DNA of 64,000 nt, from positions 62,001 to 126,000 of the IMG/VR virus record IMGVR_UViG_3300030419_008158. One strand, written 5' to 3'. How positions within the stretch are numbered: position 1 is the stretch's first letter; the number at the start of each line of letters is the position of its first letter. The translations under genes were made by a program, and so were the position numbers. Below, piece by piece: positions 46,194 to 64,000 of this stretch. Below the pieces are notes generated by a model. The model saw only the letters and a program-made list of their open reading frames with translations, was not told the DNA's origin and did no database searches.

Positions 46194-47048
46194 CTAGGAA
46201 ATCTCCACCCACGTTGGATCCGGATTAAAATAAAGCAAAATATCACCAGAATGTATGTCTAAGCAGTATCCCACAATTCTAACGATATCATTAGTCCCGC
46301 TTGGGGCGGTAAAAGTAAACTCGGCAGCTGTCGTTGACACGTAAACTGGATAACCAATCACAGCTGTTCCACCCACAGCAGAAGAATCCAGCCTGACGTA
46401 TCCCTTTACTAACATTCCATTCGTTGTTGGAGTTGATCCCAGGGCGATAGCTAACATTTGGTAAGCTCCTGAGTCTCGTGCATTTGCATTAGACTGTGTC
46501 CACGTTCCGTCTGTGTGCAAGTAATATAGATACCCAGCAGCTGTCGACCCTGTGCCATATTTCAGTATTTCTCCACCACCTTGTCCTGCTGTTAGACTTA
46601 CTTCAAATGTTGGACTGGAAAAATTGTCAGTAACAGTCATTGCTGTGTTTCCGTCAGTTCCTCCCACATTCATAACTGTAAAGGATCCAGATGTGCCATT
46701 CAGCCGATCTGCGCCGCTATCATATGATAAATTGCCGCCCGAAAATCCGCCCGAGCCGTCATTAGTTTGAACTGCATTTCGGCCGCCGCCCGGTGAAGCA
46801 CCGCCCCCAGCCCCAGTACCAACTCGAGTTCCATCATAAAATAAAGCTCCAGTAACTGCATATAGACGAGCGCTTGTATCAGAGGGTGGCTCTGCACTTG
46901 GCATTTTTATTCCTTTGTTGAAATTCTGAGCGCCCACGCCCACTTGAATCCCATTAGGAAATACAACTGATTCTATTTCACCCGAAAGTGAATTCTTAAG
47001 AACTATAAAGTCTTTTCTGTGCAGCTCTGTTTGAGAAAAATTTGCCAT
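46194..47048 (-). CDS. Tail fibre-like protein
   Basis: Gly-rich segments (SPGGGRNAVQTNDGSGGFSG) and a C-terminal beta domain (APSGTNDIVRIVGY...FNPDPTWVE). Confidence 0.6.
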   Translation of the reverse strand: MANFSQTELHRKDFIVLKNSLSGEIESVVFPNGIQVGVGAQNFNKGIKMPSAEPPSDTSARLYAVTGALFYDGTRVGTGAGGGASPGGGRNAVQTNDGSGGFSGGNLSYDSGADRLNGTSGSFTVMNVGGTDGNTAMTVTDNFSSPTFEVSLTAGQGGGEILKYGTGSTAAGYLYYLHTDGTWTQSNANARDSGAYQMLAIALGSTPTTNGMLVKGYVRLDSSAVGGTAVIGYPVYVSTTAAEFTFTAPSGTNDIVRIVGYCLDIHSGDILLYFNPDPTWVEIS

Positions 47049-50000
47049 TACGGCACCGAAACTGGAGCTAATACTATGTCCGGATTGTCTGCTCGTTCTT
47101 TTGTTTGACCGTCATAATAGGGCAAGGAAGAAGTCGCAAATCGACTTAGATTTTGAGAATGTGTCTTTTCCGGAGAGGACTGCCCACCTGTTGTCGTATC
47201 TTGCGGCACAAAATTAATGCTGACTGGGTATTGTACAGATCCACCCTCTATTGTTGCTGGAAACTTTCTCTGCTCCAGCATATCTCTAAACTGGCCGTAT
47301 TTGTCTCTTCTAAATCTAGCATCTACAGACGATCCAAAAATTCCGGCCAAGCCGTACTTATACCCTCTAATAACAGGGCGCCATCTCTTTGGTGATACGT
47401 GAGTGCGTTCAAAAATAGGTGCGCGATTTACGCTATCGCCGAAACCCCACAGGGCCTTTTTTTGGTTTCGCAGCGCTTTTCTTCCTTTGACCACATCGCC
47501 GCGATCGTTAGACACATAACCACTTGCAGGCACAAGATCTGTATCGGAGAGCAGATAGACATCATCAATTACATACTGCGCAGAACCTAGATCCGTATCT
47601 GATGCGTTATAGGTTTGTATGGGTGGATTTCCAAAACCTGCAGCAAAGAATCGCTTTTCATTTTTTTCATAAGCAGGTATAAACCACCAAAACGGTATCA
47701 CTCCTCGAGAAGAAAATCCCATTCCCGGAACACCCGGCATAATTGTAGCACTCCCCACATCTGATATGGATCCGGCGCCGTAACCCAGAATATCTAAAGT
47801 GGCCAAAACGTCCGGAGGATAGCTGTCGTAAAGAGTTCCTCTTTGGTCAGTCAACCTTACAAATCTCTGTATAGATCCCGATGGGCCTGCTTGACCTGCA
47901 GCAACTGAGTATTCTACTTGTCTTACGTCAGGAGCTTCCGGCACTAAATTATTTAGAGAATCTAGTGCTAGCATAGAACCTGTAATTACTAGATCAACGT
48001 AAGAGCCCGACAACGCAGATCTTGGACCCACGTCCCACTGGTCATAAACTGGATTATCAAAATGCAGCGCCTCATGAATAGCATCAGAAGTAAGAGGCTG
48101 TCCTGCTTCCATTTCTACAGGAAGATTGTCACGAATTAGAGACCCGTAAAAAGTAATCTTTCCTGCGCCCGGACTAAGTGTTGTTATAGACTCAGCAACA
48201 TATCCTTCTGTCAGCTTTCCTGGGTTGCTAGTGAGGGACTCTTTGCCGTTGCTAATAAAATTAGGTGTATTTGAATAACCAATTACAATTTTAGACGACG
48301 GGTCTAGAATGTAAGGTGATTCTCTTCTAAGATCTTCTTCGACAACTCTCATAGGATTGACACGCGTACCACCGCCGGCTGGGACTGCACCGGGTCCGAC
48401 GAGACCCGCGTTGTGAAAGGTCCCGTTTATTCGAACACCAGGGGTTCCTCTGATGAATGAGTGTCCACTGGAAGCACCTGTTAGCTGTCGGCCGCCGTAA
48501 TAAGATCCGAGGAGCTCCATATAAGCACTCCAGCACGCAGAGGTATTGGTCTGGTAGAATATTCCACGAGAGGCGCTCTTGGCGAGCGGAAGAGGACCTA
48601 GGGCGGGGGACAATGGGTAAGTTCGAGGTGCAAATTCCAACCTATAAGAACCTGTTATAGGTGTTGCCCTGACATTAGATGCCGGTTGGGTCTGCACGAC
48701 GGGCCTAATAATATTTAGATCTCTGCGCCATGATCCTGTCAGAGGGGTTGTCCCTACCTCCGCAAGATGAGCAATTTCCCCAACGCCGATCAGATCTTTT
48801 GTCTTACCTAGACTTTGTGTAACCGGAGATGAGTCCGCAGCGGGGAGCGTCGGTTGTGTCCCTCCAAAAAGTGGGGAAAAAGTTTTTATTGTAGTGCTGT
48901 TGTCAGTATTATCAAACTGATTTAGCAAGAAAAATTGTTTAACACAGGGCCCGCGAAGGAGGTCTCCCGAAATGTTCTCGGGTCCAAATGATGCAGAAAA
49001 ATCTATCACAATTTTTTCTACCAAGAAAGGGTGTGAAATTGAGGAACTCATGCAGTATGTTTGACTTCCTGTCGCGTCGTATTTTTCCGAAAATGGAAAA
49101 CCATAACTAGAAACAGGTAGACCGACATAAGAGCACATTTGATCATCACCGTTGTAATTGTTGATCATTCCGGAGGGCGCAAAAGCCACTAAACCTCTGC
49201 TTCGTATACTCTGATCAAAGTTGAGAATATCGACATTTGAACCTGTAGATAAATCACCGAGAACTTCCCACTTCTCATCGGCAAAATTATAATACGCAAT
49301 TCCGGAATTGACCCCCTCACTATAACCCTCTGCATTTGGTAAGGTGCCGGTGGAAAATGCAACATTTGTGGGAATTCTGGGATTTATATCAATTGTAAAT
49401 GATGTTTTCGACCCTAAGCGCTGGCTAAATCCAGGCAAAACTCCAGAAGTAGTTCCTGTGGCATAAAATTGTGAATCATTGTCGATATACAGCCTAGACT
49501 CATTAAACGGGCTGATATTTTCTCCGGGTGTAAAGACAACGTGTGCGTCTGCCACGCCCGCAGTGGAATTGCCCTGTGCTGTTATTCCCCCAAGCTTGTT
49601 CGGTGTAGCAACGCCCCCAGAAACAAATTTATGTCTTGCAAACAAATTTGTGGGATAAAGCTTTTCACCGGTATCAAAAATTATAGTGCTTGTGTCGTCG
49701 AATGTTGACGCAAACTTTCCGGAAAAGTCAGGATCACCGGTTCTCATTATTGTGGGATAGGACCCAGTACGCACATCTTGATCATGCAGCATTACTCTGG
49801 GTGGGTTACTGATCACACCGGACTTGTAAACACCTTGGGTTACCTCATACAACGCCTTGACGTCTGTTACAGACAATACTGCATTCCAAATTCCCATTTC
49901 GGAAACTTTCCCGGAGAGTTTATTGCCTGCGCCTCTGTAAAGTGTGCCCCAATAAAGATCATTTGATCCTGCGGTCATTCCCGAATATGTGCCCTGCACG

Positions 50001-50632
50001 GAACCTTCCCCGCTGCTGTCTAGGACACCGTCAACATATATTGAAATTTCTCTATCGTCGTATATGCCGTTGTAAGTTACCACAAGATGATGCCACTCAT
50101 TGCTGCCCAAAAGGCCAGCTGTGGCTGTGTGCAAATAACTATAGTTGTTACTGTCTGTATGAAATGAGACCCTCAGGACCCCCCCTTTGGAGGTCTCACG
50201 AATGGCGTACTCATTTTGCTTACCCATGATCCAGGCCCAGGTGGTGGCATTTGGGTTTCCTTTTACCCACATCGAAATTGAAAACGGTGAAGGTCCGGTG
50301 TTATCATCAAAACTAAGATCATCGCTATCTGCAGTCTTTATAAAAGATAAATCAGCTGTAGAGTGACAGTTAAAAGAGTCGGGATTAAAGCTGACCGGTC
50401 TTAGAGAGAAGGGTGTGTCAATGTCATTTTGAACCGGAAGATGGTCAGTGTTCCACCTGTCGTATGTAACAGTGTGAGAATTTTTAGAAGCATCAACAGC
50501 AGAATCGCCGGGTTTGTCAGTGGGTCCCGGGCGGATCAATAACACTAGATTATCTTGCTTGTCATACAGGCCGTTTTGAGTTACAAACGATTTTTTGTAG
50601 TCAACCAGTATATTTCTTTTTAAGTGTCCCAT
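47048..50632 (-). CDS. LamG (concanavalin A-like) domain baseplate/tail protein
   Basis: FSISMWVK, EWHHLVVTY, IYVDG and GKVSEMGIWNAVLS..VKALY; C-terminal FRRDKYGQFRDMLEQR. Confidence 0.75.
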   Translation of the reverse strand: MGHLKRNILVDYKKSFVTQNGLYDKQDNLVLLIRPGPTDKPGDSAVDASKNSHTVTYDRWNTDHLPVQNDIDTPFSLRPVSFNPDSFNCHSTADLSFIKTADSDDLSFDDNTGPSPFSISMWVKGNPNATTWAWIMGKQNEYAIRETSKGGVLRVSFHTDSNNYSYLHTATAGLLGSNEWHHLVVTYNGIYDDREISIYVDGVLDSSGEGSVQGTYSGMTAGSNDLYWGTLYRGAGNKLSGKVSEMGIWNAVLSVTDVKALYEVTQGVYKSGVISNPPRVMLHDQDVRTGSYPTIMRTGDPDFSGKFASTFDDTSTIIFDTGEKLYPTNLFARHKFVSGGVATPNKLGGITAQGNSTAGVADAHVVFTPGENISPFNESRLYIDNDSQFYATGTTSGVLPGFSQRLGSKTSFTIDINPRIPTNVAFSTGTLPNAEGYSEGVNSGIAYYNFADEKWEVLGDLSTGSNVDILNFDQSIRSRGLVAFAPSGMINNYNGDDQMCSYVGLPVSSYGFPFSEKYDATGSQTYCMSSSISHPFLVEKIVIDFSASFGPENISGDLLRGPCVKQFFLLNQFDNTDNSTTIKTFSPLFGGTQPTLPAADSSPVTQSLGKTKDLIGVGEIAHLAEVGTTPLTGSWRRDLNIIRPVVQTQPASNVRATPITGSYRLEFAPRTYPLSPALGPLPLAKSASRGIFYQTNTSACWSAYMELLGSYYGGRQLTGASSGHSFIRGTPGVRINGTFHNAGLVGPGAVPAGGGTRVNPMRVVEEDLRRESPYILDPSSKIVIGYSNTPNFISNGKESLTSNPGKLTEGYVAESITTLSPGAGKITFYGSLIRDNLPVEMEAGQPLTSDAIHEALHFDNPVYDQWDVGPRSALSGSYVDLVITGSMLALDSLNNLVPEAPDVRQVEYSVAAGQAGPSGSIQRFVRLTDQRGTLYDSYPPDVLATLDILGYGAGSISDVGSATIMPGVPGMGFSSRGVIPFWWFIPAYEKNEKRFFAAGFGNPPIQTYNASDTDLGSAQYVIDDVYLLSDTDLVPASGYVSNDRGDVVKGRKALRNQKKALWGFGDSVNRAPIFERTHVSPKRWRPVIRGYKYGLAGIFGSSVDARFRRDKYGQFRDMLEQRKFPATIEGGSVQYPVSINFVPQDTTTGGQSSPEKTHSQNLSRFATSSLPYYDGQTKERADNPDIVLAPVSVP

Positions 50633-50633
50633 A

Positions 50634-51617
50634 CTACTTCTTCAATCCCCCGTACACAATCGAATCATATCCATAATTGTCATTTTGTGAATAGACAAAG
50701 CCGTGACGAGCGATGACTACAGAGGATCTTACATTATTTGTTCTATTAGACCGGTATGTAATAGAAGCGCTAACAATACCTTGAATCATTACATTTCTAA
50801 TGTCGTTATCTAGAATGTCGCTTTTATAAAAAAGCTCTCTTTGAGACGTATCAGTGTACGGACCTATATTGCGTTCAGCGTCTGAAAATACACCTGGTAG
50901 ATCAATTAGCCCCGCAAAAGATTCTTGAGAATCGTAAAACGGCCTAGTTGAATCATCTCTTAGATCGATCTTGTCATCGACTACTAAAGACTCTCTTTTC
51001 ACATTTGTCATGGAGTTGTCCCCTTTGACGCTGTGTGAAATGTACGGCATCTCGATAGATGTTCTATCTGCAATTTTTCTAATGTCAAAAGGCTCGATGA
51101 CACCATCAAATGAACTCGGTTGTGATCCAGCATTAACCAAGCTAATTGGTTGTACGAAAGTGATTGCATGGCTTTTTATAATACCCACCGGGTCGAATTT
51201 ATCGCACTCTTCGTACGGCTCGCTGCCTTCATATCCCGGTGTTTGTCCTAGATCTCTCTTTTCAATTACATGATCCAGGACTTCTGTGACTCTTCCGGCT
51301 GTGTCTAGAGAGACCATCGAGCCAGATCCGGCTATTCCTATGCTTTCATACTCAAGCAAAGAATTGAAAAAGTTTTGATTTTGCACTACACCGTCAAGTG
51401 CAGTAACAAAACTAATGTTGCCCCTAGTCTTTAGCTGTGTGTATCCCACAAGCTGGGAAAGATCTTTTATTTCTGCACCCTGTACGAATGGTGATAGAGA
51501 GGCTGTATATACTAACCCTACAAAAGTCACCGTCGTCCCAGTGGACACCAGTTTTATTTCTGTGGGATCTGTAGGAGTAGGAGGCGGTACGGGCCTCAGT
51601 GATTCAGGTAATGCCAT
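50634..51617 (-). CDS. Hypothetical baseplate-region structural protein
   Basis: 327-aa ORF with DGVIEPF and C-terminal DSIVYGGLKK; coupled to neighbours. Confidence 0.6.
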   Translation of the reverse strand: MALPESLRPVPPPTPTDPTEIKLVSTGTTVTFVGLVYTASLSPFVQGAEIKDLSQLVGYTQLKTRGNISFVTALDGVVQNQNFFNSLLEYESIGIAGSGSMVSLDTAGRVTEVLDHVIEKRDLGQTPGYEGSEPYEECDKFDPVGIIKSHAITFVQPISLVNAGSQPSSFDGVIEPFDIRKIADRTSIEMPYISHSVKGDNSMTNVKRESLVVDDKIDLRDDSTRPFYDSQESFAGLIDLPGVFSDAERNIGPYTDTSQRELFYKSDILDNDIRNVMIQGIVSASITYRSNRTNNVRSSVVIARHGFVYSQNDNYGYDSIVYGGLKK

Positions 51618-54600
51618 TAGAACTTCCTCAGTGAACCAACAATTTGCTGGAGTCTAATTACTTCTTTTCCGCCCCTGTCTTCCTCTCCCAAGTACAAATC
51701 GTAATATTTGTAAGAAAACTTTGCTCTTTCTAGCGCGTGACTTTCTATGACGTAAGAAGATCCTAAAAATCTAGTATCGCCAGGGATCATTTGTTCAAGT
51801 ATATCACCAATAGTATCATCAAAAAACTTAAAAAACTCAAAAAACGACAAAAAATTAACTTTCTTTGTCAGACGATTGAAATAAATTCTTCTAAGATTTC
51901 TCAAGCTAGGGTAGTCCTGCGAAAATACAAGCTCAGGACTTCCAATCAGATTGTCCAGAGCATTAAGGGTTGAAAATATGTTCATAATATCTTCGTTTAA
52001 CCCTTGCGTAACAGAAATTTCTACAGCAACTCGATTGTCATCTTGAGGCTGCTCATTTTGAGGTATGTCATGTAAAGGTGCAAAGGAAGCACCTGACTCT
52101 CTTACGTTTTCTAGACTTTTGTAACTTCTTACCCTTATCTTGTTAGGATTTTCGCCTGATTGGAAATTACTTGAAAGCACATCAAAATCAAACCTTTCCG
52201 GTAAAATTACTCTTTTTGAAGATTCAAACCCTGTTCCGGCAAATGTATTACTATTTTGACTAAAGTCAAATCCAGTAATTTCACCGCTAGAATCGGACTC
52301 AGTGATAGGCTGGTCAAGGGATACATCCAATCTTAGCTTTTGAAAAGATCCGCTTGTATTTGTTACAAAACTAAAATTTGCTTCTGGGTCTTTGACGCCA
52401 ACTGACTTGAAGTTTTTTGAATGTGTCTTGGTCTCTTCCTCCGAAAGCCCCTTAGAATAAAATCTAAGCGAGGAAAGCATTCCTGTGAATGTAGTGTATC
52501 TGCTTTCTGGGTAATCATTGTTCACGGTATCATTGAGGAAAGCGTTTGATGATGTGTTGATGCTCTGGCTTCCAATTACAAGAAATGTTCCGCTCGAATT
52601 ATAATTCTCGCTAAATTTTTGAGCATAGTTTGTACCATTTCTGGCACCATCGTCAAAATAGCTTGATGTTGTATAGAATTGCTCTAAGCCTGCAGGGCTA
52701 AATTTTGAAGCTCGAAGGAAGTATGAAGAAGATGTATATGTGTCTATTAGATCGTTTCGATTTCTTCCAAAGCTAATTTGCCATTTTCCGCCATCAAAAA
52801 TATCGACGCCCGTAAGTGTAAGATTCAGACCCTCAGAGTCTGTGACACTATTAGGGCGACCAAATAAAGTAACTGATCCTGTAATAGATGATAGGGGCAC
52901 GGGTTTTCTTGCGACGCAATTATACATGACATTGTGTTCATTGCCCAATGATCCTGTTGTGTGAATACGAACAAGGCTCTGTTTTGTTGTGTGACTTATT
53001 TTGTTAGTGAATTTATAGCGACCTTCAAAAGTCCACGACCCAGATGTAAAATATCCATCGGATACTTGGCTAGTACCTAACTCACCTTGTGTCCCCCAAG
53101 CTTCAGGTTTTCCAGGTTCAGTTCTCGATCCTGATAAAAATGAACTCTGGAGGAATGGACGTCCGGGGTCAATTCCTTGCGGGTTTACAGTTCCTGCATC
53201 TGCCAGCGTTCCTGACATGTTGAGCATGGCTGCTATTTCGTGTCTTCTTATAAAAGAATCACCTAAGTTTCTAATGGAAGATCCGCCGTATTCTCTAATT
53301 CTAATCGGGCCATTTGGTGATATTCCTAAATTAGACAAAAGAGAGCGAACGCTTGCCATCGTCCCTCTGGACGATAATAGGTAGGGCAAGTCTGAAAATA
53401 TTCTTCTCCAAAGCATGTTTTGTACAGTTTGGATTGCTGTTGTAGTTGTTCTATCCTGTCTTACATTTTTACCGTCAAGAAACTGCTCTGCGCTTAAAGC
53501 ACCAAACATTTCAGGAAGATCTACTCCATAATATCGAGACAGCCACGGTAAAAGCTGATTGCTAACTGTTTCATTTGTAAGCACGTCTACTTTCAACAAA
53601 CGCTTGAATTCGTCGATAAACATTTTTAGTTCATCAAATGATTCTGCAAATGTAAATAAAATTGCTGCTATAATTTGAGGCTGCCCTACAGTAGCACCAC
53701 CCGGCTGGTCTATTGCAGTACCAATATCATCAGAAAGACCAGCATTTTCTGATTCGAATCCTTCAAATGATGATGCATCTCTAAGATAGTGTGGAGGTAT
53801 TAGTCGTGTGACTATATTGGGATTAGATGCATCATACTGCTTTGCTTCTGTTAAAAAAGAAGAATTTAGACTTGTCAAAGAAGAAAATGAAGGAAACAAA
53901 GAGATTGTTGAGGCGCGGGATTCTCCGGACATAGGTGAAGAACCAAACGTGTCTGTGCTTCTTTGGTTCATCGAAAAGTTAGATATCGAAGAATGCAAAC
54001 TATTTCCTGAATAATCTAGGACTAAATTTGATCCATTTCCGGAAAATGTTCCTGAAGGTTCGTTAAGACGAAAAAGAAGCTTTAAATCTTTTTGTGCAAA
54101 AACTTCCTGGTATTGCTGCTTTCTTATTTCTTTTTGTGTTTTTCTTTTGTGCCAAAACCTGATGTCGTCAAGGGCGCCCGACAACGTTTCAGCTGGAGTC
54201 ATTACTGTTCCCGCAATAGTTTGAGATGAACCACTTCCAATATAAAGCGGTGATGTAGTAAAGTCAATACTTCCAATAGCAGCAAAAGAAGAACTAGACT
54301 CAAGAGCTGCATCTCTATAAAGAAATAGCTGGCCCGGGCCGGCGGATTTATCAAAAACAGCAGCTACGTGCTGAAAGTTACCCTTTGTAATCTCCATGGA
54401 AGTTTTGAGACTTTGTGACCCAGATATGACTGCCATCACCAAATTTGCTGTCTCTGTACTTGAAGATTCTTCAAGATATACAGTAATGCCATTGTTAGAT
54501 GATTTTTTCTGAAAAACTATTTGATTGTCATTAGCAATTCCCGGAACAGAAAAGTGAAACTCTAGAGTAAAAGGACTATTTTTAGGATCCAAGACGCCTT

Positions 54601-55084
54601 CGCCTGTTGGATTTTTTGAAAGTGTCGGTGTGGTTGATCCTTTAAAGTCTTTTACTTCAATAAATGTTCCGGGAGAACTAGGGGAAGCAGATCCGCTAAA
54701 AGCAAGATAACCTGACCTTGAAGGGAACTGATTGTACACATACTTTTCAAATCCTGTCAAGCTATCAACAAATGCAACAATTTCGCTAAAAGTTCCGTCA
54801 AAAGGCATCTTGTTGATAATTTTATCGAAAGCTTTTTGAACTTTAGCTTCGGCACTATTAAAAAATGTATGATTTGAAAAATTAGAAAAATCTACATTGA
54901 GCTGCTGCGTACTTTTTAGTGCTGATCCTGGAGAGTCGTAACGAAATGTTCCTGTCAAAGGAGATGCTTTTTCATCAACACCCTCTAGAGTAACAGACCT
55001 GACGGGTGCGGAATTTTTTCGATTTCGACGAATGCCTGATTTAAAGAGCAGACTCTCTACACCCGTATTACTAGATCTGGCCAT
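51617..55084 (-). CDS. Baseplate wedge protein (gp7-like position) with two LamG-like domains
   Basis: LIPPHYL, FDELKMFID, WRRIFSDLPYLLSSRGT..SVRSLL...IREYG wedge motif, two LamG-like inserts and IESHALER. Confidence 0.7.
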   Translation of the reverse strand: MARSSNTGVESLLFKSGIRRNRKNSAPVRSVTLEGVDEKASPLTGTFRYDSPGSALKSTQQLNVDFSNFSNHTFFNSAEAKVQKAFDKIINKMPFDGTFSEIVAFVDSLTGFEKYVYNQFPSRSGYLAFSGSASPSSPGTFIEVKDFKGSTTPTLSKNPTGEGVLDPKNSPFTLEFHFSVPGIANDNQIVFQKKSSNNGITVYLEESSSTETANLVMAVISGSQSLKTSMEITKGNFQHVAAVFDKSAGPGQLFLYRDAALESSSSFAAIGSIDFTTSPLYIGSGSSQTIAGTVMTPAETLSGALDDIRFWHKRKTQKEIRKQQYQEVFAQKDLKLLFRLNEPSGTFSGNGSNLVLDYSGNSLHSSISNFSMNQRSTDTFGSSPMSGESRASTISLFPSFSSLTSLNSSFLTEAKQYDASNPNIVTRLIPPHYLRDASSFEGFESENAGLSDDIGTAIDQPGGATVGQPQIIAAILFTFAESFDELKMFIDEFKRLLKVDVLTNETVSNQLLPWLSRYYGVDLPEMFGALSAEQFLDGKNVRQDRTTTTAIQTVQNMLWRRIFSDLPYLLSSRGTMASVRSLLSNLGISPNGPIRIREYGGSSIRNLGDSFIRRHEIAAMLNMSGTLADAGTVNPQGIDPGRPFLQSSFLSGSRTEPGKPEAWGTQGELGTSQVSDGYFTSGSWTFEGRYKFTNKISHTTKQSLVRIHTTGSLGNEHNVMYNCVARKPVPLSSITGSVTLFGRPNSVTDSEGLNLTLTGVDIFDGGKWQISFGRNRNDLIDTYTSSSYFLRASKFSPAGLEQFYTTSSYFDDGARNGTNYAQKFSENYNSSGTFLVIGSQSINTSSNAFLNDTVNNDYPESRYTTFTGMLSSLRFYSKGLSEEETKTHSKNFKSVGVKDPEANFSFVTNTSGSFQKLRLDVSLDQPITESDSSGEITGFDFSQNSNTFAGTGFESSKRVILPERFDFDVLSSNFQSGENPNKIRVRSYKSLENVRESGASFAPLHDIPQNEQPQDDNRVAVEISVTQGLNEDIMNIFSTLNALDNLIGSPELVFSQDYPSLRNLRRIYFNRLTKKVNFLSFFEFFKFFDDTIGDILEQMIPGDTRFLGSSYVIESHALERAKFSYKYYDLYLGEEDRGGKEVIRLQQIVGSLRKF

Positions 55085-56650: not shown

Positions 56651-58495
56651 TCACACAGCTGTTCCAATTACATCAAACGAAGGAAACTTTAGCTCGAATA
56701 TTGATCCTCGATCAGGTATTATCATACCTTTTGTTTGACTTTGTTTAAAATCAAATGTATTGGTGTTATAAACCCTATCTTCAACTTGCCCAAATCGAGG
56801 AAATACTTGAAGATCGACAAGTGAGATAACAAAATTAGAATTGATAATAATGTTTGTAATGTCATCAATAATAATTGGCTGATCTATGTTGAAGTATTCC
56901 TTTTCAAAAGCCAGACTAATTGCTGAATTTATCGATGTAAGCACTTGATTTTTGTTGGCATTTTCTGCTACAAAAACGCTGTACTTAATTCCAAAGTTTA
57001 TTACCTTTGCATCCAAAATATCTACGGCATCACCTACCAAGCGAAGCTCATTTAAATAAGTGCTTACATTTTTTTTCAAAGAGTCAGGGGCCACGCCTAG
57101 GCTTCCGTCTTCATTTTTTGAAAGCACATAAACAAGTGCAGAACCGGGATTTATAGGATTGGGTGCTATAGATGCCCTATAGATTCTTCCAAACTCACTA
57201 GGTAGCGTATATAGACGCGCCAGTAAATCTTCTTTTGACACCACTCTTCTTTGAGATTTTCTTGCTGAAGTGATGCGGGCTTTTAAGTCAGTTAGTGTTG
57301 GAGCTTCATCGCCTCCCCTAGCAGATTCTGGATTTGTCACTAAAACTGATTGTCTTACAGTGAGCGCATCGGTTGCACTAGGATTTCTTCTAAATGTTAG
57401 CGAAAGAACATCTACTGACTCGATTGCGTTGGACGAGACATTGTGAGACAATCCTCCCCCATGTCTATATCTGACTGTTAAGTTTGTTCCGCGAGGACTT
57501 ATACCTAAAGTTTGCGTCTCTAAAAGTGATGCTGGATCTATGCTAAACCTAGGTACAACAGTCTTTCCATACAAATTGAGAGAAAGCTCGCTGGGATCGG
57601 GTATAATGTCATCGTCAAGTGTTCCTGCATTGCCGCTTCCAAACCTTACAGTAGTCAATTGAGTTGTTGGGTCATAGCGTCGAGTAAATCGATAGGGTGC
57701 TGCTATGACTCTCATAAAATAGGGGACCTGTGATGCATCTGCTGTTTGATTTTTTGTCTTTAGAAATACAGTATCTTCGCTCAAAGATGACACTTCATAA
57801 TATGTGTTAGAATCAGTATCTTTGATAGACAGAATAGCAGTGATAAATTTTTGTGATAAAGTAAACTCTCTAAATGGTACAAATGTATCTGACACTGTTA
57901 TAGTTTCTGTCGTTTCCTCTCCTGAGACTGCTATTACGTCCCTGGAGACTTTAAATGATTTTGGTTGGCCATTGGCCTCTGTAGCAGATATTATGTAGCT
58001 GGCTAAAAAATTACCGTCTTCGTCTTGCTCAGAAAAATCTATGTCTTCTGTCGTGGTAAATGTTACACCTGTAAAAGAAGATGTTTGTGTTCCTGCCAAT
58101 ATTACGGGCATTGCGCTTCTTTTAGGCAAATACAGACCATTGACCTGCTCAGCAGGAACTGTTATTGTAAATTTTAAACTTACAACAGACGGAGATGCCC
58201 CAACTATGTCGACTCCCGCATTTCTTAGGTGTGTGATAATGCTGTCAGACTCAACTGCCCGCAGAGGGTCAAGTTCTCTGAAGGCGTGGTCTAAATAAAA
58301 ACTTAGTGAATCACCAACTGTTGCTGCAAAATCCAAAAACATTCCGCCAACTGATGGTTCAGAAAAGTCCTGGATTTTATCCGGAAAGTATGTTCTAGCT
58401 GTATCTAAAAGCTGCGCTCGTATTGTCTCAAAATCTCGAGCAATATACGTTCTATTTTGCTCTTTTTTTATCTTTTTCTTTACTTGAAATGCCAT
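56651..58495 (-). CDS. gp6: Baseplate wedge protein (T4 gp6 / baseplate J-like)
   Basis: RDFETIR, DFSEPSVG, GDSLSFYLD, FGSG, YRHGGG..NV, GGDEA and QRRVVSKED. Confidence 0.88.
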   Translation of the reverse strand: MAFQVKKKIKKEQNRTYIARDFETIRAQLLDTARTYFPDKIQDFSEPSVGGMFLDFAATVGDSLSFYLDHAFRELDPLRAVESDSIITHLRNAGVDIVGASPSVVSLKFTITVPAEQVNGLYLPKRSAMPVILAGTQTSSFTGVTFTTTEDIDFSEQDEDGNFLASYIISATEANGQPKSFKVSRDVIAVSGEETTETITVSDTFVPFREFTLSQKFITAILSIKDTDSNTYYEVSSLSEDTVFLKTKNQTADASQVPYFMRVIAAPYRFTRRYDPTTQLTTVRFGSGNAGTLDDDIIPDPSELSLNLYGKTVVPRFSIDPASLLETQTLGISPRGTNLTVRYRHGGGLSHNVSSNAIESVDVLSLTFRRNPSATDALTVRQSVLVTNPESARGGDEAPTLTDLKARITSARKSQRRVVSKEDLLARLYTLPSEFGRIYRASIAPNPINPGSALVYVLSKNEDGSLGVAPDSLKKNVSTYLNELRLVGDAVDILDAKVINFGIKYSVFVAENANKNQVLTSINSAISLAFEKEYFNIDQPIIIDDITNIIINSNFVISLVDLQVFPRFGQVEDRVYNTNTFDFKQSQTKGMIIPDRGSIFELKFPSFDVIGTAV

Positions 58496-58974
58496 TAGTT
58501 TGCCACCACGATTGAAACCTCTACTATCTGATTAGTTGCATTAATTGACGGGATCGAATACCCCACCTTTATTGTATTTACTATTACGTCTCCCTCCGGA
58601 GTTGCCGACGTTTCAAATGTTTCTAGCGAAACATAGGGCAAATATTTTGTAACAGCAGCAGAAATTCTTGCAAGTGCTTCTTCGATAACATCATTAGAAG
58701 TCATATCATAAGACAGCTCTTTTAAGTTCGCACCGTAGTCTGTAAGCATCAATCTCTCTCCGTGATTGGTGCTCAATAAATTTTTCATGTTATCCCGAAC
58801 TTGATCGACAAGTCTTTTTGACATCTTAAACATCGACTCTTCATCTTGCTCAAAAGAAATAGGCGTCAATATCCCTATGGGAAGACTTACAGCTGTGTCT
58901 TCCTTCATTGTCTGGACCTTACTTTGCAAGTTCCCAACAGATTTGAAATCGTATATTTTTTTAGCCTGTGCCAT
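58495..58974 (-). CDS. gp25: Baseplate wedge / sheath initiator (gp25-like)
   Basis: QVRDNMKNLLSTNHGERLMLTDYGANL and KYLPYV. Confidence 0.88.
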   Translation of the reverse strand: MAQAKKIYDFKSVGNLQSKVQTMKEDTAVSLPIGILTPISFEQDEESMFKMSKRLVDQVRDNMKNLLSTNHGERLMLTDYGANLKELSYDMTSNDVIEEALARISAAVTKYLPYVSLETFETSATPEGDVIVNTIKVGYSIPSINATNQIVEVSIVVAN

Positions 58975-59061: not shown

Positions 59062-59628
59062 CTATGTAAGCATACCTTGTGCATCCCCAGTTGCAGGAGA
59101 AGTAAATGCAGGAACAGGAGCACTCCCTGGTGGCGGACCCATAAATCCTGCAACCGTTACGTTTCCATCAATGTTGTACGTAGTAGTTACCTCTCCTGTT
59201 GCAGCAAATGCATGCACTCCATTTCCAATACCTTCTGCTAAGGTTCTTATGATGCCATCAGAGTCTGCGCCGTCTTTTTTGCCTTCTTCTCTTGAGTCAA
59301 TATGAGCACTTTCAATATCAGCAGCTAAATCTACGTCTGTTGAAAATTTCAAATCACCATTCGGGCCTTTTGCTGTTCCCGGTGAAACAGTGGCTCCGGC
59401 GCCAACAAGAGGAGGCAGTGCTGTAGCAACATGACCAGGCGGAATTATGTGATCAGTGACGACCTTGGCAGTCTCCATGTATTTTTTAATTGCTGCGGCT
59501 AACTCTTCAGAAAGAGTTTTGATAATTGCATCTGAGTCTGCACCTGTATTTTTTCCTTCATCTCTTGCAGTCTTATAGGCATTTTCAATATCAGTCAAAA
59601 GTGTTGATTTATCTAGTCCTTGACCCAT
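59062..59628 (-). CDS. Spike-associated protein with two tandem copies of an ~90-aa repeat
   Basis: Two copies: DIENAYKTARDEGKNTGADSDAIIKTL and DIESAHIDSREEGKKDGADSDGIIRTL. Confidence 0.7.
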   Translation of the reverse strand: MGQGLDKSTLLTDIENAYKTARDEGKNTGADSDAIIKTLSEELAAAIKKYMETAKVVTDHIIPPGHVATALPPLVGAGATVSPGTAKGPNGDLKFSTDVDLAADIESAHIDSREEGKKDGADSDGIIRTLAEGIGNGVHAFAATGEVTTTYNIDGNVTVAGFMGPPPGSAPVPAFTSPATGDAQGMLT

Positions 59629-59849
59629 TATGTAAGCTCTCCTGTGCCCGTTGTCGGCTGTGGAACCATGTTTCCACCTGGTGCAGTCTGCTGTGTTCCA
59701 GTTTGCCCTGTTGTGACCACCAAAGCAGACTTTGTGTATTTATCAATAGCCTCAGAAAGCTCAGTTGCAAGTGTTGTAATAATTCCATCAGAGTCGGCCC
59801 CCGTTTTCGCGCCTTCATCTCTTGCAGTCTTATAGGCATTTTCAATATC
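59555..59849. repeat. 38-bp exact direct repeat (59555-59592 and 59812-59849) shared by two adjacent genes
   Basis: ccttcatctcttgcagtcttataggcattttcaatatc occurs twice, with a degenerate third copy near 59282-59319. Confidence 0.9.
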
Positions 59850-59885
59850 TGCAATTAGAGGTTCTATTGCTGCTGATAGTGGCAT
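59628..59885 (-). CDS. Spike-associated protein with one copy of the same repeat
   Basis: DIENAYKTARDEGAKTGADSDGIITTL...TTGTGELT. Confidence 0.7.
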   Translation of the reverse strand: MPLSAAIEPLIADIENAYKTARDEGAKTGADSDGIITTLATELSEAIDKYTKSALVVTTGQTGTQQTAPGGNMVPQPTTGTGELT

Positions 59886-59887
59886 TT

Positions 59888-61516
59888 TTATTCTCCAAAG
59901 ATTCTTTCAGACTTAACTTCTGTTATTCTGGGCTTGAGAGTTCCAATTCCAGCTTTAAGATCTGTGGCTGCCTGAACTATCTGAGGAGATGGGGCGCCAA
60001 AGCCGGGTGTTGTATTTTTCAAAGCTGTGGCTGCGAACTTATCAATCTCTTTCATTAGATCGTTCCAAAGGTCTTCCAGCTCTTTGTATTTTATGTAAGG
60101 CTGGGCCTCGCCGTCTCCCGGACCTTTGCCTGCGCCTCCATCTTTTTTCTGTCGACCTAAAAATATTTTGCTTCCACTTATCTGTACAGTTCCATCTGAC
60201 TCGATATAGATGCATGCAAGATCTTTGTCCGGATCTCCTTCTTTGACAATTCTAATAGTCCCCTGGACCTTTTCTAGCTTGGTCGGCAACTTATTTTCAT
60301 ATGCTTTGGTAGGTAAATTTCGAGCAACTATTCTGATGTGATCCGACTTTACAGCGATACATGGTCCCGGGTCCACGGGCTTATAGTCAGTTGCAAATCC
60401 CTTTGCCACTATTTGATCTAGACCCAATTTTTTATCAATATCTGATTTTTCGGATGCATAAATTCTTGCTGCATCAACTACAAAGTCAGGGTCGCCTTCG
60501 CTAGGGTTGGTTTTTGGATTTCCTTGATCGGGCGGAGCGAAACCCTCGTTGGCATTTTCTTCGTCCCTATCTTGTGTTTCGCCTGGATTTTTATCAGTTT
60601 CAAATTTTTCCAGTGAATTCTTGACAACAAAGGGTTTTGTACTATTCTTTTCTCCGCCGGCTTGAGCTTTTTTTCTCTCTTTTTTTGCTTCGTCTGCATC
60701 TGGTTCAAAGTATCGCCCTCGCCCGACAACAACATCAATGGCACCAGATTTTTCAACCACCTTATCGCTAGAATTCGATTTTTCCCGGGCGTCAGGTCGA
60801 ACAACTGCATCGAACCCTCTGTCTGTCCCTAAAGAAATTGCTGTATTATTAGAACCCTGTATTACGAGATCACCCGGGCGATTTGTGAATCTGGGTACAG
60901 GCTCGATAGACATCTGGGCGTACTCTACTGCGTCAGAAATAACTTTTACAATAGCATCATTGAACCCACCGATTACATAGTCTTCCTTATCAGTAGGATC
61001 ATTTGGAAAGCCAGCAATTCTTTTATCGTCTACAGGTATCGAGGCAGATAGTTCACTTTTTGCTACTCTGGAAAAAGATGTCATGTTGACATCTTCATTT
61101 TCTAAATCTTCAGGCACCCTAGAAAGCCAGTAATATGTTCCTGCTCCTTTTGGTGCGATCGGAAGCTCTCTAAAAACCCATACTAGCTCACCTGGCTTTA
61201 TTGGCATTGAAAGATGGCTAGAAAAGAATGGATAGCAAATTAAATCTTGATCCACATCTTCAGATGAGCCGTCAGTTATAAGCCGACAGATAACTGAGTT
61301 TCTGGGAGCTTTGTAATAAAGTTTTTCCTGCCCTTTCAAAAGACCTTCAGGCGTTTCATCAAGTCTCAAAGAAGGATCACACAATGTCTGAATTACAACG
61401 CCTCTGTGAATTATCGGAGTCGAGGATAATTTCGTTATTGCATTTTCTGTTTCATTGAGCCCGCCGCCGCTCTTGGAAGACTTTCCGTAAACAGCTCTTG
61501 AAGCACCATCACTCAT
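59888..61516 (-). CDS. Baseplate hub/spike protein (gp5/gpV-like)
   Basis: YPFFSSHLSMPIKPGELVWV..YYWL (OB-fold-like), PGDLVIQGSNNTAISLG, KSDHIRIVAR and IFLG...S..IF.E; upstream of gp25. Confidence 0.7.
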   Translation of the reverse strand: MSDGASRAVYGKSSKSGGGLNETENAITKLSSTPIIHRGVVIQTLCDPSLRLDETPEGLLKGQEKLYYKAPRNSVICRLITDGSSEDVDQDLICYPFFSSHLSMPIKPGELVWVFRELPIAPKGAGTYYWLSRVPEDLENEDVNMTSFSRVAKSELSASIPVDDKRIAGFPNDPTDKEDYVIGGFNDAIVKVISDAVEYAQMSIEPVPRFTNRPGDLVIQGSNNTAISLGTDRGFDAVVRPDAREKSNSSDKVVEKSGAIDVVVGRGRYFEPDADEAKKERKKAQAGGEKNSTKPFVVKNSLEKFETDKNPGETQDRDEENANEGFAPPDQGNPKTNPSEGDPDFVVDAARIYASEKSDIDKKLGLDQIVAKGFATDYKPVDPGPCIAVKSDHIRIVARNLPTKAYENKLPTKLEKVQGTIRIVKEGDPDKDLACIYIESDGTVQISGSKIFLGRQKKDGGAGKGPGDGEAQPYIKYKELEDLWNDLMKEIDKFAATALKNTTPGFGAPSPQIVQAATDLKAGIGTLKPRITEVKSERIFGE

Positions 61517-61903: not shown

Positions 61904-62278
61904 CTATCTATAGTTGCGCCAATTCCACAAAGGGCGCTTTGACAAATAAGTTGTTTTTCTCTGATTGTCGTATGCTTCCTTTTCAAAGGGATTTTGATTG
62001 TACCCTTCTACAAAACTTCTGTGCTTTAGAGAACCCCACAGAAAATAAAAAGTGTAGACAAGCCAGTGAAAAAGAAACAACATCTCAATTTGCTGAATGT
62101 AATGAATCGTCTCATGGCGCTTTGATGTCTTTGACAAAGACCCTCTAGAAAAAACAAAGCACAAAATATTAACTGCTCCAATTTCAATCGGTGACACCTT
62201 TGAAAGCCAAATCGGCACCTTGCTGTTCTCAAAAATCCACGGCGTTCTTCTTGAAAGCCACTTTCTTATGACGGACAT
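61904..62278 (-). CDS. Small zincin-like HExxH protein with hydrophobic segment
   Basis: RHETIHYIQQ.E, a hydrophobic helix and NPFEKEAY (third ligand candidate). Confidence 0.65.
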   Translation of the reverse strand: MSVIRKWLSRRTPWIFENSKVPIWLSKVSPIEIGAVNILCFVFSRGSLSKTSKRHETIHYIQQIEMLFLFHWLVYTFYFLWGSLKHRSFVEGYNQNPFEKEAYDNQRKTTYLSKRPLWNWRNYR

Positions 62279-63021
62279 TATAGACCTCCTTTTTCTTTTT
62301 CTTCCACCACTAATCTAGAATAAATCTTTCTTATTTTGCTCATTGATTTTGTCAAGTGCTTTTTTTCCAAACCGGAAATCTCGCACAAGTAAATGTAAAT
62401 CGACTGTTTATTGATAAAATCAAGCTCTTGAGCATTATCAAACAATTTTTCAACTGCACTAATTGTAATCAGGTCTCTATCGTCAGATAGATGCTCTCTT
62501 ACTTTCTTAACTCTAGCTATGTTTTCAGCTCTATTTTCACTGTTAATGATTAGCTCTTCTGTTGACGGAAGCTCAACATATCTATCAATTTGCTGCTTTA
62601 TCAGAGAATCGCCCTTGCGTGACGTTACTTCGTCCAAATAAACGTGCTTGAAATACTTTTTTCTATGACTATTTGTCGTATTTATTAGAAAGTTTTTAGC
62701 AACTACATTGAAATAGCTGAATGCTTTGGACCCTTTGGCTGGGTCCCACTTATGAAGTGACTTATAAAGAAAAAAGCAACCCTCCTCTATGAGTTCTTGT
62801 GTGTTCATAAGCGGAGACTTAAATCCGTAGACGTAGATCAGACTTTCGACCAATTTTTTCATTGCTGGAAGAATTTCCTGACCGTATACTTGTTCTCTCT
62901 CTTTTTTCTCTTCAGATGTCAGAAACTTTACAATTGAAACTTCTGTATCTTTGGTAAAATACATCACACTTTTTTGACCAGGGCGCCTCTTTATTCTTTT
63001 TCTGCCTTTTTTTGCCGCCAT
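62278..63021 (-). CDS. Phage sigma factor (T4 gp55-like, probably late transcription)
   Basis: N-terminal YF, ELIEEG..FL...KWDPAKGSKAFSYFNVVAKN (sigma region 2-like) and a C-terminal HTH-like segment. Confidence 0.65.
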   Translation of the reverse strand: MAAKKGRKRIKRRPGQKSVMYFTKDTEVSIVKFLTSEEKKEREQVYGQEILPAMKKLVESLIYVYGFKSPLMNTQELIEEGCFFLYKSLHKWDPAKGSKAFSYFNVVAKNFLINTTNSHRKKYFKHVYLDEVTSRKGDSLIKQQIDRYVELPSTEELIINSENRAENIARVKKVREHLSDDRDLITISAVEKLFDNAQELDFINKQSIYIYLCEISGLEKKHLTKSMSKIRKIYSRLVVEEKEKGGL

Positions 63022-63309
63022 TTATTCTGTCTCCTGTTCTATGTTTTCTATATTTTTTGTAAGCGCTAAAGCAACTGAGTGCAGAGAATCTCTTACAGCA
63101 CTTATGTCGTTAACGACAGACTTTACTTCGGCACTGTCATAAAACAGGGGGCGCTTTAGTACATCTGACATCGTATCATACTTTTCATCAATTACATCCA
63201 GGCATTCTTCGATGGTGTCTTCAAGGCGAATAATTGTGATTCCCAACTTTATATTCTTGTAGACTGAAATGCTCAAAAGAATTCCTAGTATTGTAGCTAA
63301 GTAAATCAT
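63022..63309 (-). CDS. Small membrane-anchored hypothetical protein
   Basis: N-terminal hydrophobic helix, then coiled coil and LFYDSAEV. Confidence 0.65.
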   Translation of the reverse strand: MIYLATILGILLSISVYKNIKLGITIIRLEDTIEECLDVIDEKYDTMSDVLKRPLFYDSAEVKSVVNDISAVRDSLHSVALALTKNIENIEQETE

Positions 63310-64000
63310 CTATAGGTGTTTTCTCACGATACTCTCAAACTTTTCTTGTAATGCTTCCAAAGAGTGAGATTTGATTAGTTTTTCAGAAAGATTTTTCGCA
63401 TGAGCGCTAAACTGATTGGGTTTTTCATACACAGCTTTCATTTTTCTGCAAAAGTTTCCCTCTCTTGGATTTGCCCAAGCTGATCCGGCTACAAATATTT
63501 TTCCGTCAATTCTAGCAGGAGGTACAGGGCACATATCAAACTTTACTTTCTGAAAACTGGCGCCTTCCAAAAACTCTGTATGGGCAGACCAGTCTGTTGC
63601 AACAACTGGAAGTCCAGAAACTGCTGCCTCAAGCAGGGGCAAACCAAACCCTTCCCCACGAGTTGCAGACATATATCCTATAAGTTTCTGACTCTTGTAA
63701 ACATTTTTCATTTCCTCTCGAGTCATTGTGCCGTGCATCATATAGAGTTTTGGTGCTCTGTCTAAATTCACACTTGAAGAAGCCCTCACCTGTCTTAAAG
63801 TTTTTCTGACCAACTCTCTGTCTATTGTAGTGTCTCTTCCTCTAGATGTCTTTACAATCAACCCTACATCTTTTTTCCCTTCAAACGCCTTCAAAAACCA
63901 AAGAATACTCGATAATAAATTTTTTCTATCTGCATCAGGATTATCGCTAGTTAGAGTGCCTACTGTTAGAAAGTTTTTGTCTGTCGGTATGTCTTCTAAA
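63310..64000 (-). CDS. Glycosyltransferase family 4 (GT-B), C-terminal part
   Basis: Frame open to the window end (...DRKNLL...), with RGEGFGLPLLEAAVSGLPVVATDWS signature. Confidence 0.9.
   Translation of the reverse strand, partial: LEDIPTDKNFLTVGTLTSDNPDADRKNLLSSILWFLKAFEGKKDVGLIVKTSRGRDTTIDRELVRKTLRQVRASSSVNLDRAPKLYMMHGTMTREEMKNVYKSQKLIGYMSATRGEGFGLPLLEAAVSGLPVVATDWSAHTEFLEGASFQKVKFDMCPVPPARIDGKIFVAGSAWANPREGNFCRKMKAVYEKPNQFSAHAKNLSEKLIKSHSLEALQEKFESIVRKHL

What the first reader, a model, noticed from the sequence alone, without database searches (positions are those of the whole stretch)
59062..59885. One-repeat plus two-repeat gene pair at the spike-tip position: possible pseudo-trimeric non-PAAR tip
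Seen: directly after the spike gene, an 85-aa gene has one copy and a 188-aa gene has two copies of a helix-helix-beta unit (DIE.A....R.EG...GADSD.II.TL...TG.G). Each copy has a different Pro/Gly loop, and a 38-bp exact DNA repeat is shared between the genes. No PAAR motif is present. Known: T4 gp5.4/PAAR caps the trimeric spike at this position. Inference: 1+2 = 3 units form an asymmetric heterodimer matching the three-fold spike. The exact repeat suggests recent duplication or gene conversion and could allow recombinational loop shuffling.
Basis: partly seen in the sequence, partly recalled or inferred. Interest (0 to 1): 0.6.

Follow-up and report, generated by a model that had tools for sequence, protein, structure and literature searches.

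The report
Split three-part cap for phage spike
Two small neighbouring genes of an uncultured marine giant phage most likely build a three-part cap for the tip of its cell-puncturing spike from one plus two copies of the same module; well-studied phages use an unrelated protein (PAAR) there, and relatives build the same cap from three identical chains or one fused chain.

Summary
An 85-aa gene (59628-59885, -) carries one copy and a 188-aa gene (59062-59628, -) two copies of a ~90-aa unit made of two helices and a beta part. They lie directly between a central-spike gene (59888-61516) and gp25-like/gp6-like baseplate genes. A 38-bp exact repeat links the two genes.

In every relative examined, the unit genes follow the spike gene, and the units per locus number one (11 contigs) or three, never two or four. 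Three units come as 1+2 genes (7 loci) or as one fused gene (5 loci). Unit positions are orthologous across split and fused forms, and a fused form is sister to a split form.

A fused relative folds confidently (pLDDT 93) into a fold with no solved analogue. A five-chain model of three spike C-termini plus both proteins supports binding (ipSAE 0.81, best control 0.00). It shows cyclic pseudo-threefold packing, with contacts to the conserved terminal loop of all three spike chains.

No PAAR domain exists in the 284-kb genome. The exact repeat is a recent short gene-conversion patch, not a recent duplication. Loop shuffling has no support. All evidence is computational.

The parts
59888..61516 (-). 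Central spike gene (542 aa): N-terminal OB-fold, beta-helical middle and a C-terminal helical hairpin.
59891..60088 (-). Spike residues 477-542: two helices (477-500, 511-534) joined by the near-invariant loop TPG(F/Y)GxPSPQ, ending in the near-invariant tail SERIFGE. This is the proposed docking platform.
   Evidence: Helices come and conservation across 15 spikes. The same tail directly precedes the unit genes in further contigs.
59981..60019 (-). Spike loop residues 500-512, which the 85-aa protein touches in all three spike copies in the model.
   Evidence: Interface list (contacts with expected error under 8 A).
59628..59885 (-). Cap gene 1 (85 aa): one unit, position U1.
   Evidence: It groups with U1 of another split locus in the unit tree. 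It was the partner, with pLDDT 88-90.
59344..59628 (-). Cap gene 2, first unit (residues 1-95), position U2.
   Evidence: In the unit tree it sits among U2 units of both two-unit and three-unit proteins.
59062..59343 (-). Cap gene 2, second unit (residues 96-188 plus the stop codon), position U3, with the longest Pro-rich distal loop.
   Evidence: It sits among U3 units of two-unit and three-unit proteins.
59555..59592 (.). 38-bp exact repeat, copy in gene 2 (helix 1 of U2).
   Evidence: The window's copies show 0 mismatches, against 9 in the same patch of relative L035 and 7-8 between orthologues.
59812..59849 (.). 38-bp exact repeat, copy in gene 1 (helix 1 of U1).
   Evidence: A contig from an independent study spans 59555-59841 without a difference.
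58495..58974 (-). gp25-like baseplate wedge gene (159 aa), the downstream boundary of the cap position.
   Evidence: PF04965 E 4e-8 and phrog_43. It holds the same position in relatives.
56651..58495 (-). gp6/Baseplate_J-like wedge gene (614 aa), genomic context.
   Evidence: PF04865 E 3e-10 and phrog_219.

Best explanation
The two genes encode the two chains of one heterodimeric cap. One unit (85 aa) and two units (188 aa) pack side by side around a pseudo-threefold axis. The result is a six-helix bundle continued by a beta structure built from the three Pro/Gly-rich hairpins. The end of the bundle that carries the conserved EG..GADSD inter-helix loops sits on the three TPG(F/Y)GxPSPQ loops at the end of the trimeric central spike. 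The differentiated beta/loop end therefore forms the leading point of the tail. The cap fills the role that PAAR/gp5.4 has in T4, other myophages, T6SS and eCIS: a pseudo-threefold piece closing a threefold spike. Its fold is different, and it docks on a helical-hairpin platform instead of a blunt beta-helix. On tail contraction it would be the first part pushed into the host envelope. The family keeps three ways of making three units: three copies of a one-unit chain (ancestral-like), a 1+2 pair as here, and a fused single chain. Shown in silico: the repeat, the synteny, the one-or-three rule, the orthology of unit positions, and the confident fold and interface. Inferred: presence in the virion, distal orientation, homotrimer state of single-unit relatives, and a role in penetration.
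For: A unit profile finds 224 proteins in 1.84 billion. The real hits have 1, 2 or 3 units and never 4. In every locus with upstream DNA, the spike homologue directly precedes the unit genes and a gp25-like gene follows. Units per locus are one in 11 contigs, 1+2 in 7 loci (window, L004 group, L012, L027, L028, L030, L035) and three fused in 5 loci (L022, L023, L024, L031, L032). Every two-unit gene with upstream DNA has a one-unit gene before it, and no three-unit gene has an extra unit gene. Unit positions are orthologous across split and fused forms (18 label changes against a shuffled mean of 72.6, 0 of 200 shuffles as low). On the spike tree the fused L024 is sister to the split L028 (99/98), inside the window's clade (100/100). 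AF2 of the fused relative P0002 gives pLDDT 93.1 and pTM 0.88, with three equal helix-helix-strand blocks. In one search, ESMFold2 folded spike 380-542 x3 plus the 188-aa and 85-aa proteins. ipSAE was 0.81/0.79/0.81 and the best of 3 controls was 0.00. That mark was reached by 58 of 80 solved complexes and 2 of 110 mismatched pairs, and these counts hold only roughly for this multi-chain job with my own alignments. The runs share at least 98% of contacts and the partner's pLDDT is at least 88. In that model, helix 1 of U1 packs on helix 2 of U3 and helix 2 of U1 on helix 1 of U2. Equivalent residues (47 of the 85-aa protein; 47 and 138 of the 188-aa protein) meet at the axis. The partner touches spike residues 500-512 in all three copies. 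PF05488 is absent from the complete genome.
Confidence: 0.68

Rival explanations
1. The pseudo-trimer forms and binds the spike C-terminus, but only as an assembly factor. It would be a clamp or chaperone that registers the three spike chains during folding and then leaves, like phage fibre or spike chaperones encoded just downstream of their client. It would not be part of the virion.
For: The gene sits directly downstream of its predicted client. Binding to the last-folded C-terminal part of the spike would suit a trimerisation clamp. No virion data exist.
Against: The distal beta/loop parts are highly conserved among close relatives, although they make no predicted contact with the spike. 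Some fused relatives add extra domains, which is more typical of an exposed tip than of a chaperone. The genome has no other tip candidate such as PAAR.
Confidence: 0.13
2. The heterodimer is a structural baseplate part located elsewhere, for example around the spike or between spike and hub like the phiKZ pin ring, and not at the distal tip.
For: The gene lies inside the baseplate module. Orientation in the virion is only inferred. The phiKZ central region has several small accessory proteins (PMC13250141).
Against: One 85-aa unit touches the same terminal loop of all three spike chains. Those loops must therefore meet on the axis at the free end of the spike. One cap per trimer fits a tip and does not fit a six-fold ring.
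Confidence: 0.1
3. The two genes are independent paralogues. Each would form its own oligomer or alternative tip used in different virions, or one is redundant.
For: Single-unit relatives manage with one gene.
Against: Two-unit genes were never seen without a one-unit gene in front of them. Fused three-unit genes replace the pair in sister phages. The interface model scores 0.81 against 0.00 for controls. The two genes are translationally coupled (TAATG).
Confidence: 0.04

Closest known systems
PAAR-repeat proteins, including T4 gp5.4 (Pfam PF05488)
   Same: A small protein encoded next to the spike gene. It has an internal threefold repeat that lets a non-trimeric entity close a threefold spike. 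Some members carry extension domains. It is the proposed leading point of a contractile injection device.
   Different: There is no sequence or fold relation. Here the unit is two helices plus a beta hairpin region, not a beta cone, and there is no conserved Cys/His metal site. It docks on a helical-hairpin platform, not on the blunt end of a beta-helix. It exists as 3x1, 1+2 and fused 3 units, whereas PAAR is, to my knowledge, always one chain.
phiKZ spike gp164 with monomeric spike tip gp163.1 (PMC13250141)
   Different: In phiKZ the tip is one chain joined to the C-terminus of the beta-helical domain. Here the spike has an extra helical hairpin and the tip is made of two chains.
Apex domains of P2 gpV and phi92 gp138
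   Same: They are the membrane-attacking end of a gpV-type spike. Both proteins appear among the fold matches of the window's spike.
   Different: Those apex domains are part of the spike chain and, from established knowledge, enclose an iron ion bound by histidines. The last 100 residues of this spike contain no histidine (read), and its tip is made of separate proteins.
Threefold pseudo-symmetric six-helix proteins (mitochondrial carriers, e.g. UCP1 8hbv)
   Different: The score lies in the range of common helical arrangements. Those are membrane proteins without the beta part, so this is geometric analogy only.

Membership tests
PAAR / gp5.4 (PF05488) | Match to the PAAR_motif profile (three PAAR repeats) | tested here: not met
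   Neither protein hits Pfam at E<=0.1. PF05488 has no match at E<=1 in the whole 284-kb genome, while the control genomes gave hits.
PAAR / gp5.4 (PF05488) | Conical all-beta fold | tested here: not met
   The model of the fused relative has six long helices plus strands. No PAAR structure appears among the Foldseek or VIA-align matches.
PAAR / gp5.4 (PF05488) | Binds the distal end of the trimeric spike as one pseudo-threefold entity | tested here: inconclusive
   The model supports it (0.81 against 0.00, with contacts to all three spike copies). This is prediction only, and the platform is a helical hairpin, not a beta-helix end.
gpV/gp5/VgrG-type central spike (for the 542-aa neighbour) | N-terminal OB-fold followed by a trimeric beta-helix, encoded next to gp25/gp6-like genes | tested here: inconclusive
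   The gene order requirement is met. Fold matches point consistently to spikes but are weak, and the model has pLDDT 57. No Pfam or PHROG hit.
Spike-cap unit family (unnamed, defined here) | Match to the unit profile: helix, conserved EG..GADSD loop, helix, V.T strand, Pro/Gly loop, terminal G.G.L strand | tested here: met
   All three window units match at E 1e-30 to 4e-37. The profile finds 224 proteins.
Spike-cap unit family (unnamed, defined here) | Encoded directly between the spike gene (ending ..SERIFGE) and the gp25-like gene | tested here: met
   True for the window and for all relatives with flanking DNA.
Spike-cap unit family (unnamed, defined here) | Units per locus number one or three | tested here: met
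   The window has 1+2. The survey gave 11 loci with one unit, 7 with 1+2, 5 fused, and none with two or four.
DUF937 / YidB (JGI's label for relative P0152) | Match to the DUF937 profile | tested here: not met
   The only Pfam row at E<=0.1 for the 188-aa protein is HsbA at 0.094. The label is an automatic name.

The most novel reading that the evidence does not exclude
A previously unrecognised protein family replaces PAAR as the spike-tip cap in a broad group of uncultured marine myophages. Living genomes of this group preserve all three steps of symmetry breaking at a threefold axis: homotrimer, 1+2 heterodimer and a single fused pseudo-trimer. Fusion and fission still occur between sister phages, and short gene-conversion patches still pass between the paralogous units.
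Probability: 0.6. Interest if true: 0.78.

Novelty: new variant of a known kind. Interest (0 to 1): 0.68.

Why it matters
Spike-tip proteins decide how contractile tails, pyocins, T6SS and eCIS open the target envelope and what they carry. So far essentially one solution is known: PAAR, or an apex domain built into the spike. A second, unrelated solution would widen the parts list for engineered nanosyringes and for annotating phage baseplates. Its stoichiometry is visibly evolving from 3x1 to 1+2 to 1x3, which gives a clean natural example of how a symmetric oligomer becomes an asymmetric single chain. Asymmetry may also be what allows one-per-spike additions, such as the extra domains in some fused relatives. 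The family is confined to uncultured marine phages, so these genes are 'hypothetical' everywhere today.

Tried and rejected
- **Known families:** Pfam and PHROG scans of both proteins and the spike gave nothing.
- **PDB by sequence:** only noise.
- **Other structure libraries:** BFVD (the library of predicted viral protein structures) and the ESM Atlas returned only uncharacterised phage relatives.
- **Cultured phages:** tblastn of the 188-aa protein and the spike against 50,697 phage records found no match. Distant cultured kin found through the gp6-like gene (Flavobacterium phage immuto, Microcystis phage Mel-JY01, a 484-kb uncultured phage) have no recognisable unit gene. The 371-aa protein after the immuto spike shows no internal repeat.
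- **Spurious profile hits:** the long hits P0082, P0146, P0149 and P0150 (4-6 stretches) match only profile positions about 30-70. The one I read (P0082) is a TPR-like repeat protein, so I rejected them as spurious.
- **Recent duplication as the source of the 38-bp repeat:** rejected. Outside the patch the units are about 50% identical, and the unit positions are old.
- **Loop shuffling or deletion between the repeats:** not supported. No joint or indel appeared in four marine runs. These were contigs only, so rare variants would be invisible.
- **JGI's name 'YidB (DUF937)' for a relative:** not supported.
- **Monomer AF2 of the spike:** poor, pLDDT 57, as expected for an intertwined trimer.
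- **Extra domains of longer fused relatives:** no Pfam match.

Full report
**Setting**

The window is bases 62001-126000 of a 284,429-bp virus record that CheckV rates complete. It holds near-identical DNA only in marine metagenomes. All genes around the finding are on the minus strand.

The order is as follows:
- a glycosyltransferase (63310-63999)
- a 95-aa ORF (63022-63309)
- a sigma-70-like protein (62278-63021)
- two small ORFs
- a 542-aa protein (59888-61516)
- the 85-aa gene (59628-59885)
- the 188-aa gene (59062-59628)
- a gp25-like wedge gene (58495-58974; PF04965 E 4e-8)
- a gp6/Baseplate_J-like gene (56651-58495)
- large proteins with Laminin_G_3 domains

**The observation**

- The two ORFs have the stated coordinates. 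They overlap by one base (TAATG), and each has a GGAG a few bases upstream of its start.
- One unit in the 85-aa protein and two in the 188-aa protein align over their full length at 38-52% identity. They share the conserved helix-1 motif, an EG..GADSD loop and a V.T strand. The Pro/Gly-rich segments differ in all three.
- The DNA itself shows a three-copy 90-nt family.
- The 188-aa protein finds the 85-aa gene at E 3e-15.
- The 38-bp exact repeat lies at 59555-59592 and 59812-59849.

**Is the neighbour a spike?**

Sequence methods are silent, apart from a weak profile hit to the T4 gp5 beta-helix (E 0.54). A monomer AF2 model is poor, as expected for an intertwined trimer (pLDDT 57). Its better parts are an OB-like beta domain (residues 36-133), beta strands at 350-447 and two C-terminal helices.

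The fold matches are individually weak but point one way.
- Foldseek puts phage SN cell-puncturing protein Orf41 and the E217 baseplate at ranks 1-2 (E 0.025 and 0.07). The P1 baseplate, P2 gpV and the cyanophage A-1(L) baseplate come further down.

Together with the position directly before the gp25-like and gp6-like genes, I take it as the central spike at roughly 80% confidence. Unlike gpV or gp5, it ends in a helical hairpin. The loop of that hairpin, TPG(F/Y)GxPSPQ, and its last residues, SERIFGE, are the most conserved part of the C-terminal region across 15 homologues.

A profile of seven units was searched against 1.84 billion representative proteins. It found 224 proteins at E<=1e-3. 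Among the best 150, re-scored per unit, 96 have one unit, about 26 have two and 24 have three. The few proteins with more stretches match only a part of the profile. The one I read (P0082) is a TPR-like repeat protein.

Genomic context was then read for 16 viral contigs and for contigs of ten chosen proteins. In every case with upstream DNA, the spike homologue, ending in SERIFGE or a close variant, directly precedes the unit gene or genes. Where downstream DNA exists, a gp25-like gene follows.

| Units per locus | Loci |
|---|---|
| One | 11 contigs (L003, L009, L010, L011, L013, L015, L017-L021) |
| One plus two | 7 loci (window, L004 group, L012, L027, L028, L030, L035) |
| Three fused | 5 loci (L022, L023, L024, L031, L032) |

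One further two-unit gene, L014, sits at a contig edge. No locus has two or four units. Every two-unit gene with upstream DNA is preceded by a one-unit gene. Single units fit a homotrimer.

**Orthology and evolution**

In a tree of 148 units, labels by position (U1, U2, U3, solo) are strongly clustered. There are 18 label changes against a shuffled mean of 72.6, and none of 200 shuffles was as low. U2 and U3 of two-unit proteins intermix with U2 and U3 of fused proteins. The split and fused forms are therefore the same three-part object cut differently.

On a spike tree, the window groups with two other split loci and one fused locus (support 100/100). The fused L024 is sister to the split L028 (99/98). 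Fusion or fission has thus happened between close relatives. At least three changes between the single-unit and three-unit states are needed on that tree.

**Structure**

The fused relative P0002 was folded with an alignment of 24 fused proteins. It gives pLDDT 93.1 and pTM 0.88, with three equal blocks of helix, helix and four strands.

Nothing solved resembles it.
- Foldseek's best E is 0.04.
- Predicted-structure libraries return only uncharacterised phage proteins of 186-453 aa.

**The complex**

ESMFold2 folded three copies of spike residues 380-542 together with the 188-aa and 85-aa proteins, the 85-aa protein being the scored partner. My own alignments A4, A5 and A6 were used.

- The model supports binding; it does not show it.
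- The score was 0.81 (runs 0.81, 0.79, 0.81) and the best of 3 controls was 0.00.
- That mark was reached by 58 of 80 solved complexes and 2 of 110 mismatched pairs. These counts hold only roughly, because the job used my own alignments and more than two chains.
- The runs agree in at least 98% of contacts, and the partner's pLDDT is at least 88.

The listed pairs show helix 1 of the 85-aa unit on helix 2 of U3 (residues 127-138). Helix 2 of the 85-aa unit lies on helix 1 of U2 (residues 10-18). The equivalent residues (47 of the 85-aa chain; 47 and 138 of the 188-aa chain) meet in the middle. That is a cyclic pseudo-threefold arrangement.

The partner also touches spike residues 500-512 in all three copies. 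These loops must therefore meet on the axis at the free end of the spike. The partner's contact list includes its own inter-helix loop (residues 21-33), which is the unit's most conserved motif. I infer, without pair-level proof, that this loop end faces the spike and the beta/loop end points away.

When the 188-aa chain was replaced by an unrelated protein, the partner no longer docked confidently. Docking confidence therefore belongs to the whole cap.

**No PAAR**

PF05488 has no match at E<=1 anywhere in the complete genome, while the control genomes responded.

**The exact repeat**

In the window, the 38-bp patch has 0 mismatches between U1 and U2. In relative L035, whose gene 1 is 84% identical at protein level, the same patch has 9 mismatches and the longest exact run between the two genes is 9 nt. 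Orthologues differ at 7-8 positions in the patch. Outside the patch, only about half of the shared residues use the same codon.

This is a recent short gene-conversion tract in the window's lineage, not a recent duplication. An independent 28-bp exact patch joins U1 and U3 in L027, so such events recur.

The patches lie in helix 1, not in the loops. The distal loops are identical or nearly identical between the window and its 80-84% identical relatives. A diverged contig shows mostly third-position changes there. The loops are therefore under purifying selection.

A crossover between the two repeats would leave a two-unit protein only. No such joint or indel was seen in four marine runs, and one contig from an independent study matches 59555-59841 exactly. 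These runs are kept as contigs, which cannot show rare variants.

**Comparison with what is known**

The role matches PAAR/gp5.4 and the monomeric tip gp163.1 on phiKZ gp164 (PMC13250141). All are a small protein, encoded beside the spike, that closes a threefold spike with a pseudo-threefold body.

Membership in PAAR fails on profile and on fold. What is new is the fold, the helical-hairpin platform and the three interchangeable stoichiometries. Some fused relatives carry an insert of about 110 aa or a 244-aa N-terminal extension, and a 453-aa cluster exists in the ESM Atlas. This recalls PAAR proteins with extension domains, but none of these additions has a Pfam match.

The only names any source gives to relatives are 'hypothetical protein' and an unsupported automatic 'YidB (DUF937)'. 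No cultured phage in the collection has the family at tblastn sensitivity. Flavobacterium phage immuto does have a spike with the same C-terminal hairpin (E 3e-7).

**Verdict**

The gene-conversion idea is supported, while the recent-duplication and loop-shuffling ideas are not.

My confidence in the full model, a heterodimeric pseudo-trimer capping the spike tip in the virion, is 0.68. The heterodimer itself is considerably more certain than its place in the virion.

Noticed in passing
window 59891-60088 (-); L037 1903-3039: The spike ends in a helical hairpin with a near-invariant TPG(F/Y)GxPSPQ loop and a C-terminal SERIFGE. This is unlike the beta-helix or apex ends of known spikes. A 378-aa protein of cultured Flavobacterium phage immuto has the same C-terminal domain (E 3e-7). 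There it is followed by an unrelated 371-aa helical protein annotated 'DNA repair ATPase RecN', which may be another kind of cap.
   Followed up: partly
L027 1887-2150 and 2164-2757: An independent 28-bp exact patch (encoding KENGSKDGA) joins the one-unit gene to the second unit (U3) of the two-unit gene. Short conversion tracts between cap units therefore recur in different lineages and between different unit pairs.
   Followed up: partly
P0020/P0023/P0033 (385 aa; L023 2510-3667); P0061 (559 aa; L031 744-2423): Some fused three-unit caps carry an insert of about 110 aa between units 2 and 3, or a 244-aa N-terminal extension with Asp/Gly-rich stretches. An ESM Atlas cluster of 453 aa shares the fold (TM 0.88). 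None of the extras has a Pfam match. They could be one-per-spike cargo or binding domains.
   Followed up: partly
window 51617-55084 (-) and 47048-50632 (-): Two proteins of 1155 and 1194 aa each carry a Laminin_G_3 (concanavalin-like lectin) domain downstream of the wedge genes. The relatives have the same arrangement. They are likely peripheral baseplate or receptor-binding proteins.
   Followed up: no
window 62278-63021 (-): A 247-aa protein with a weak Sigma70_r2 match (E 2e-4, below the Pfam cut-off) sits just upstream of the spike module. It keeps the same position in relatives (L003 3052-3783; 250-aa gene in L024). It may be a phage sigma factor for late genes.
   Followed up: no
window 61904-62278 (-): A 124-aa ORF contains an HExxH-type motif (HETIH) next to hydrophobic stretches. 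It has only a weak DUF3810 hit (E 0.043). It may be a small membrane metallopeptidase-like protein. No ORF of this kind was called at that position in L024.
   Followed up: no
window 59555-59592 and 59812-59849: Logan's de Bruijn contigs of the probable source run break exactly at the 38-bp repeat. This yields a separate 38-nt unitig and a 279-nt piece between the copies. Short-read assemblies of this locus can easily be fragmented or mis-joined.
   Followed up: yes
window 63310-63999 (-): A family-4 glycosyltransferase (Glycos_transf_1 E 2.5e-8; also matches GT4-conflict) lies upstream of the structural module. It is conserved at that place in relatives L024 and L028.
   Followed up: no
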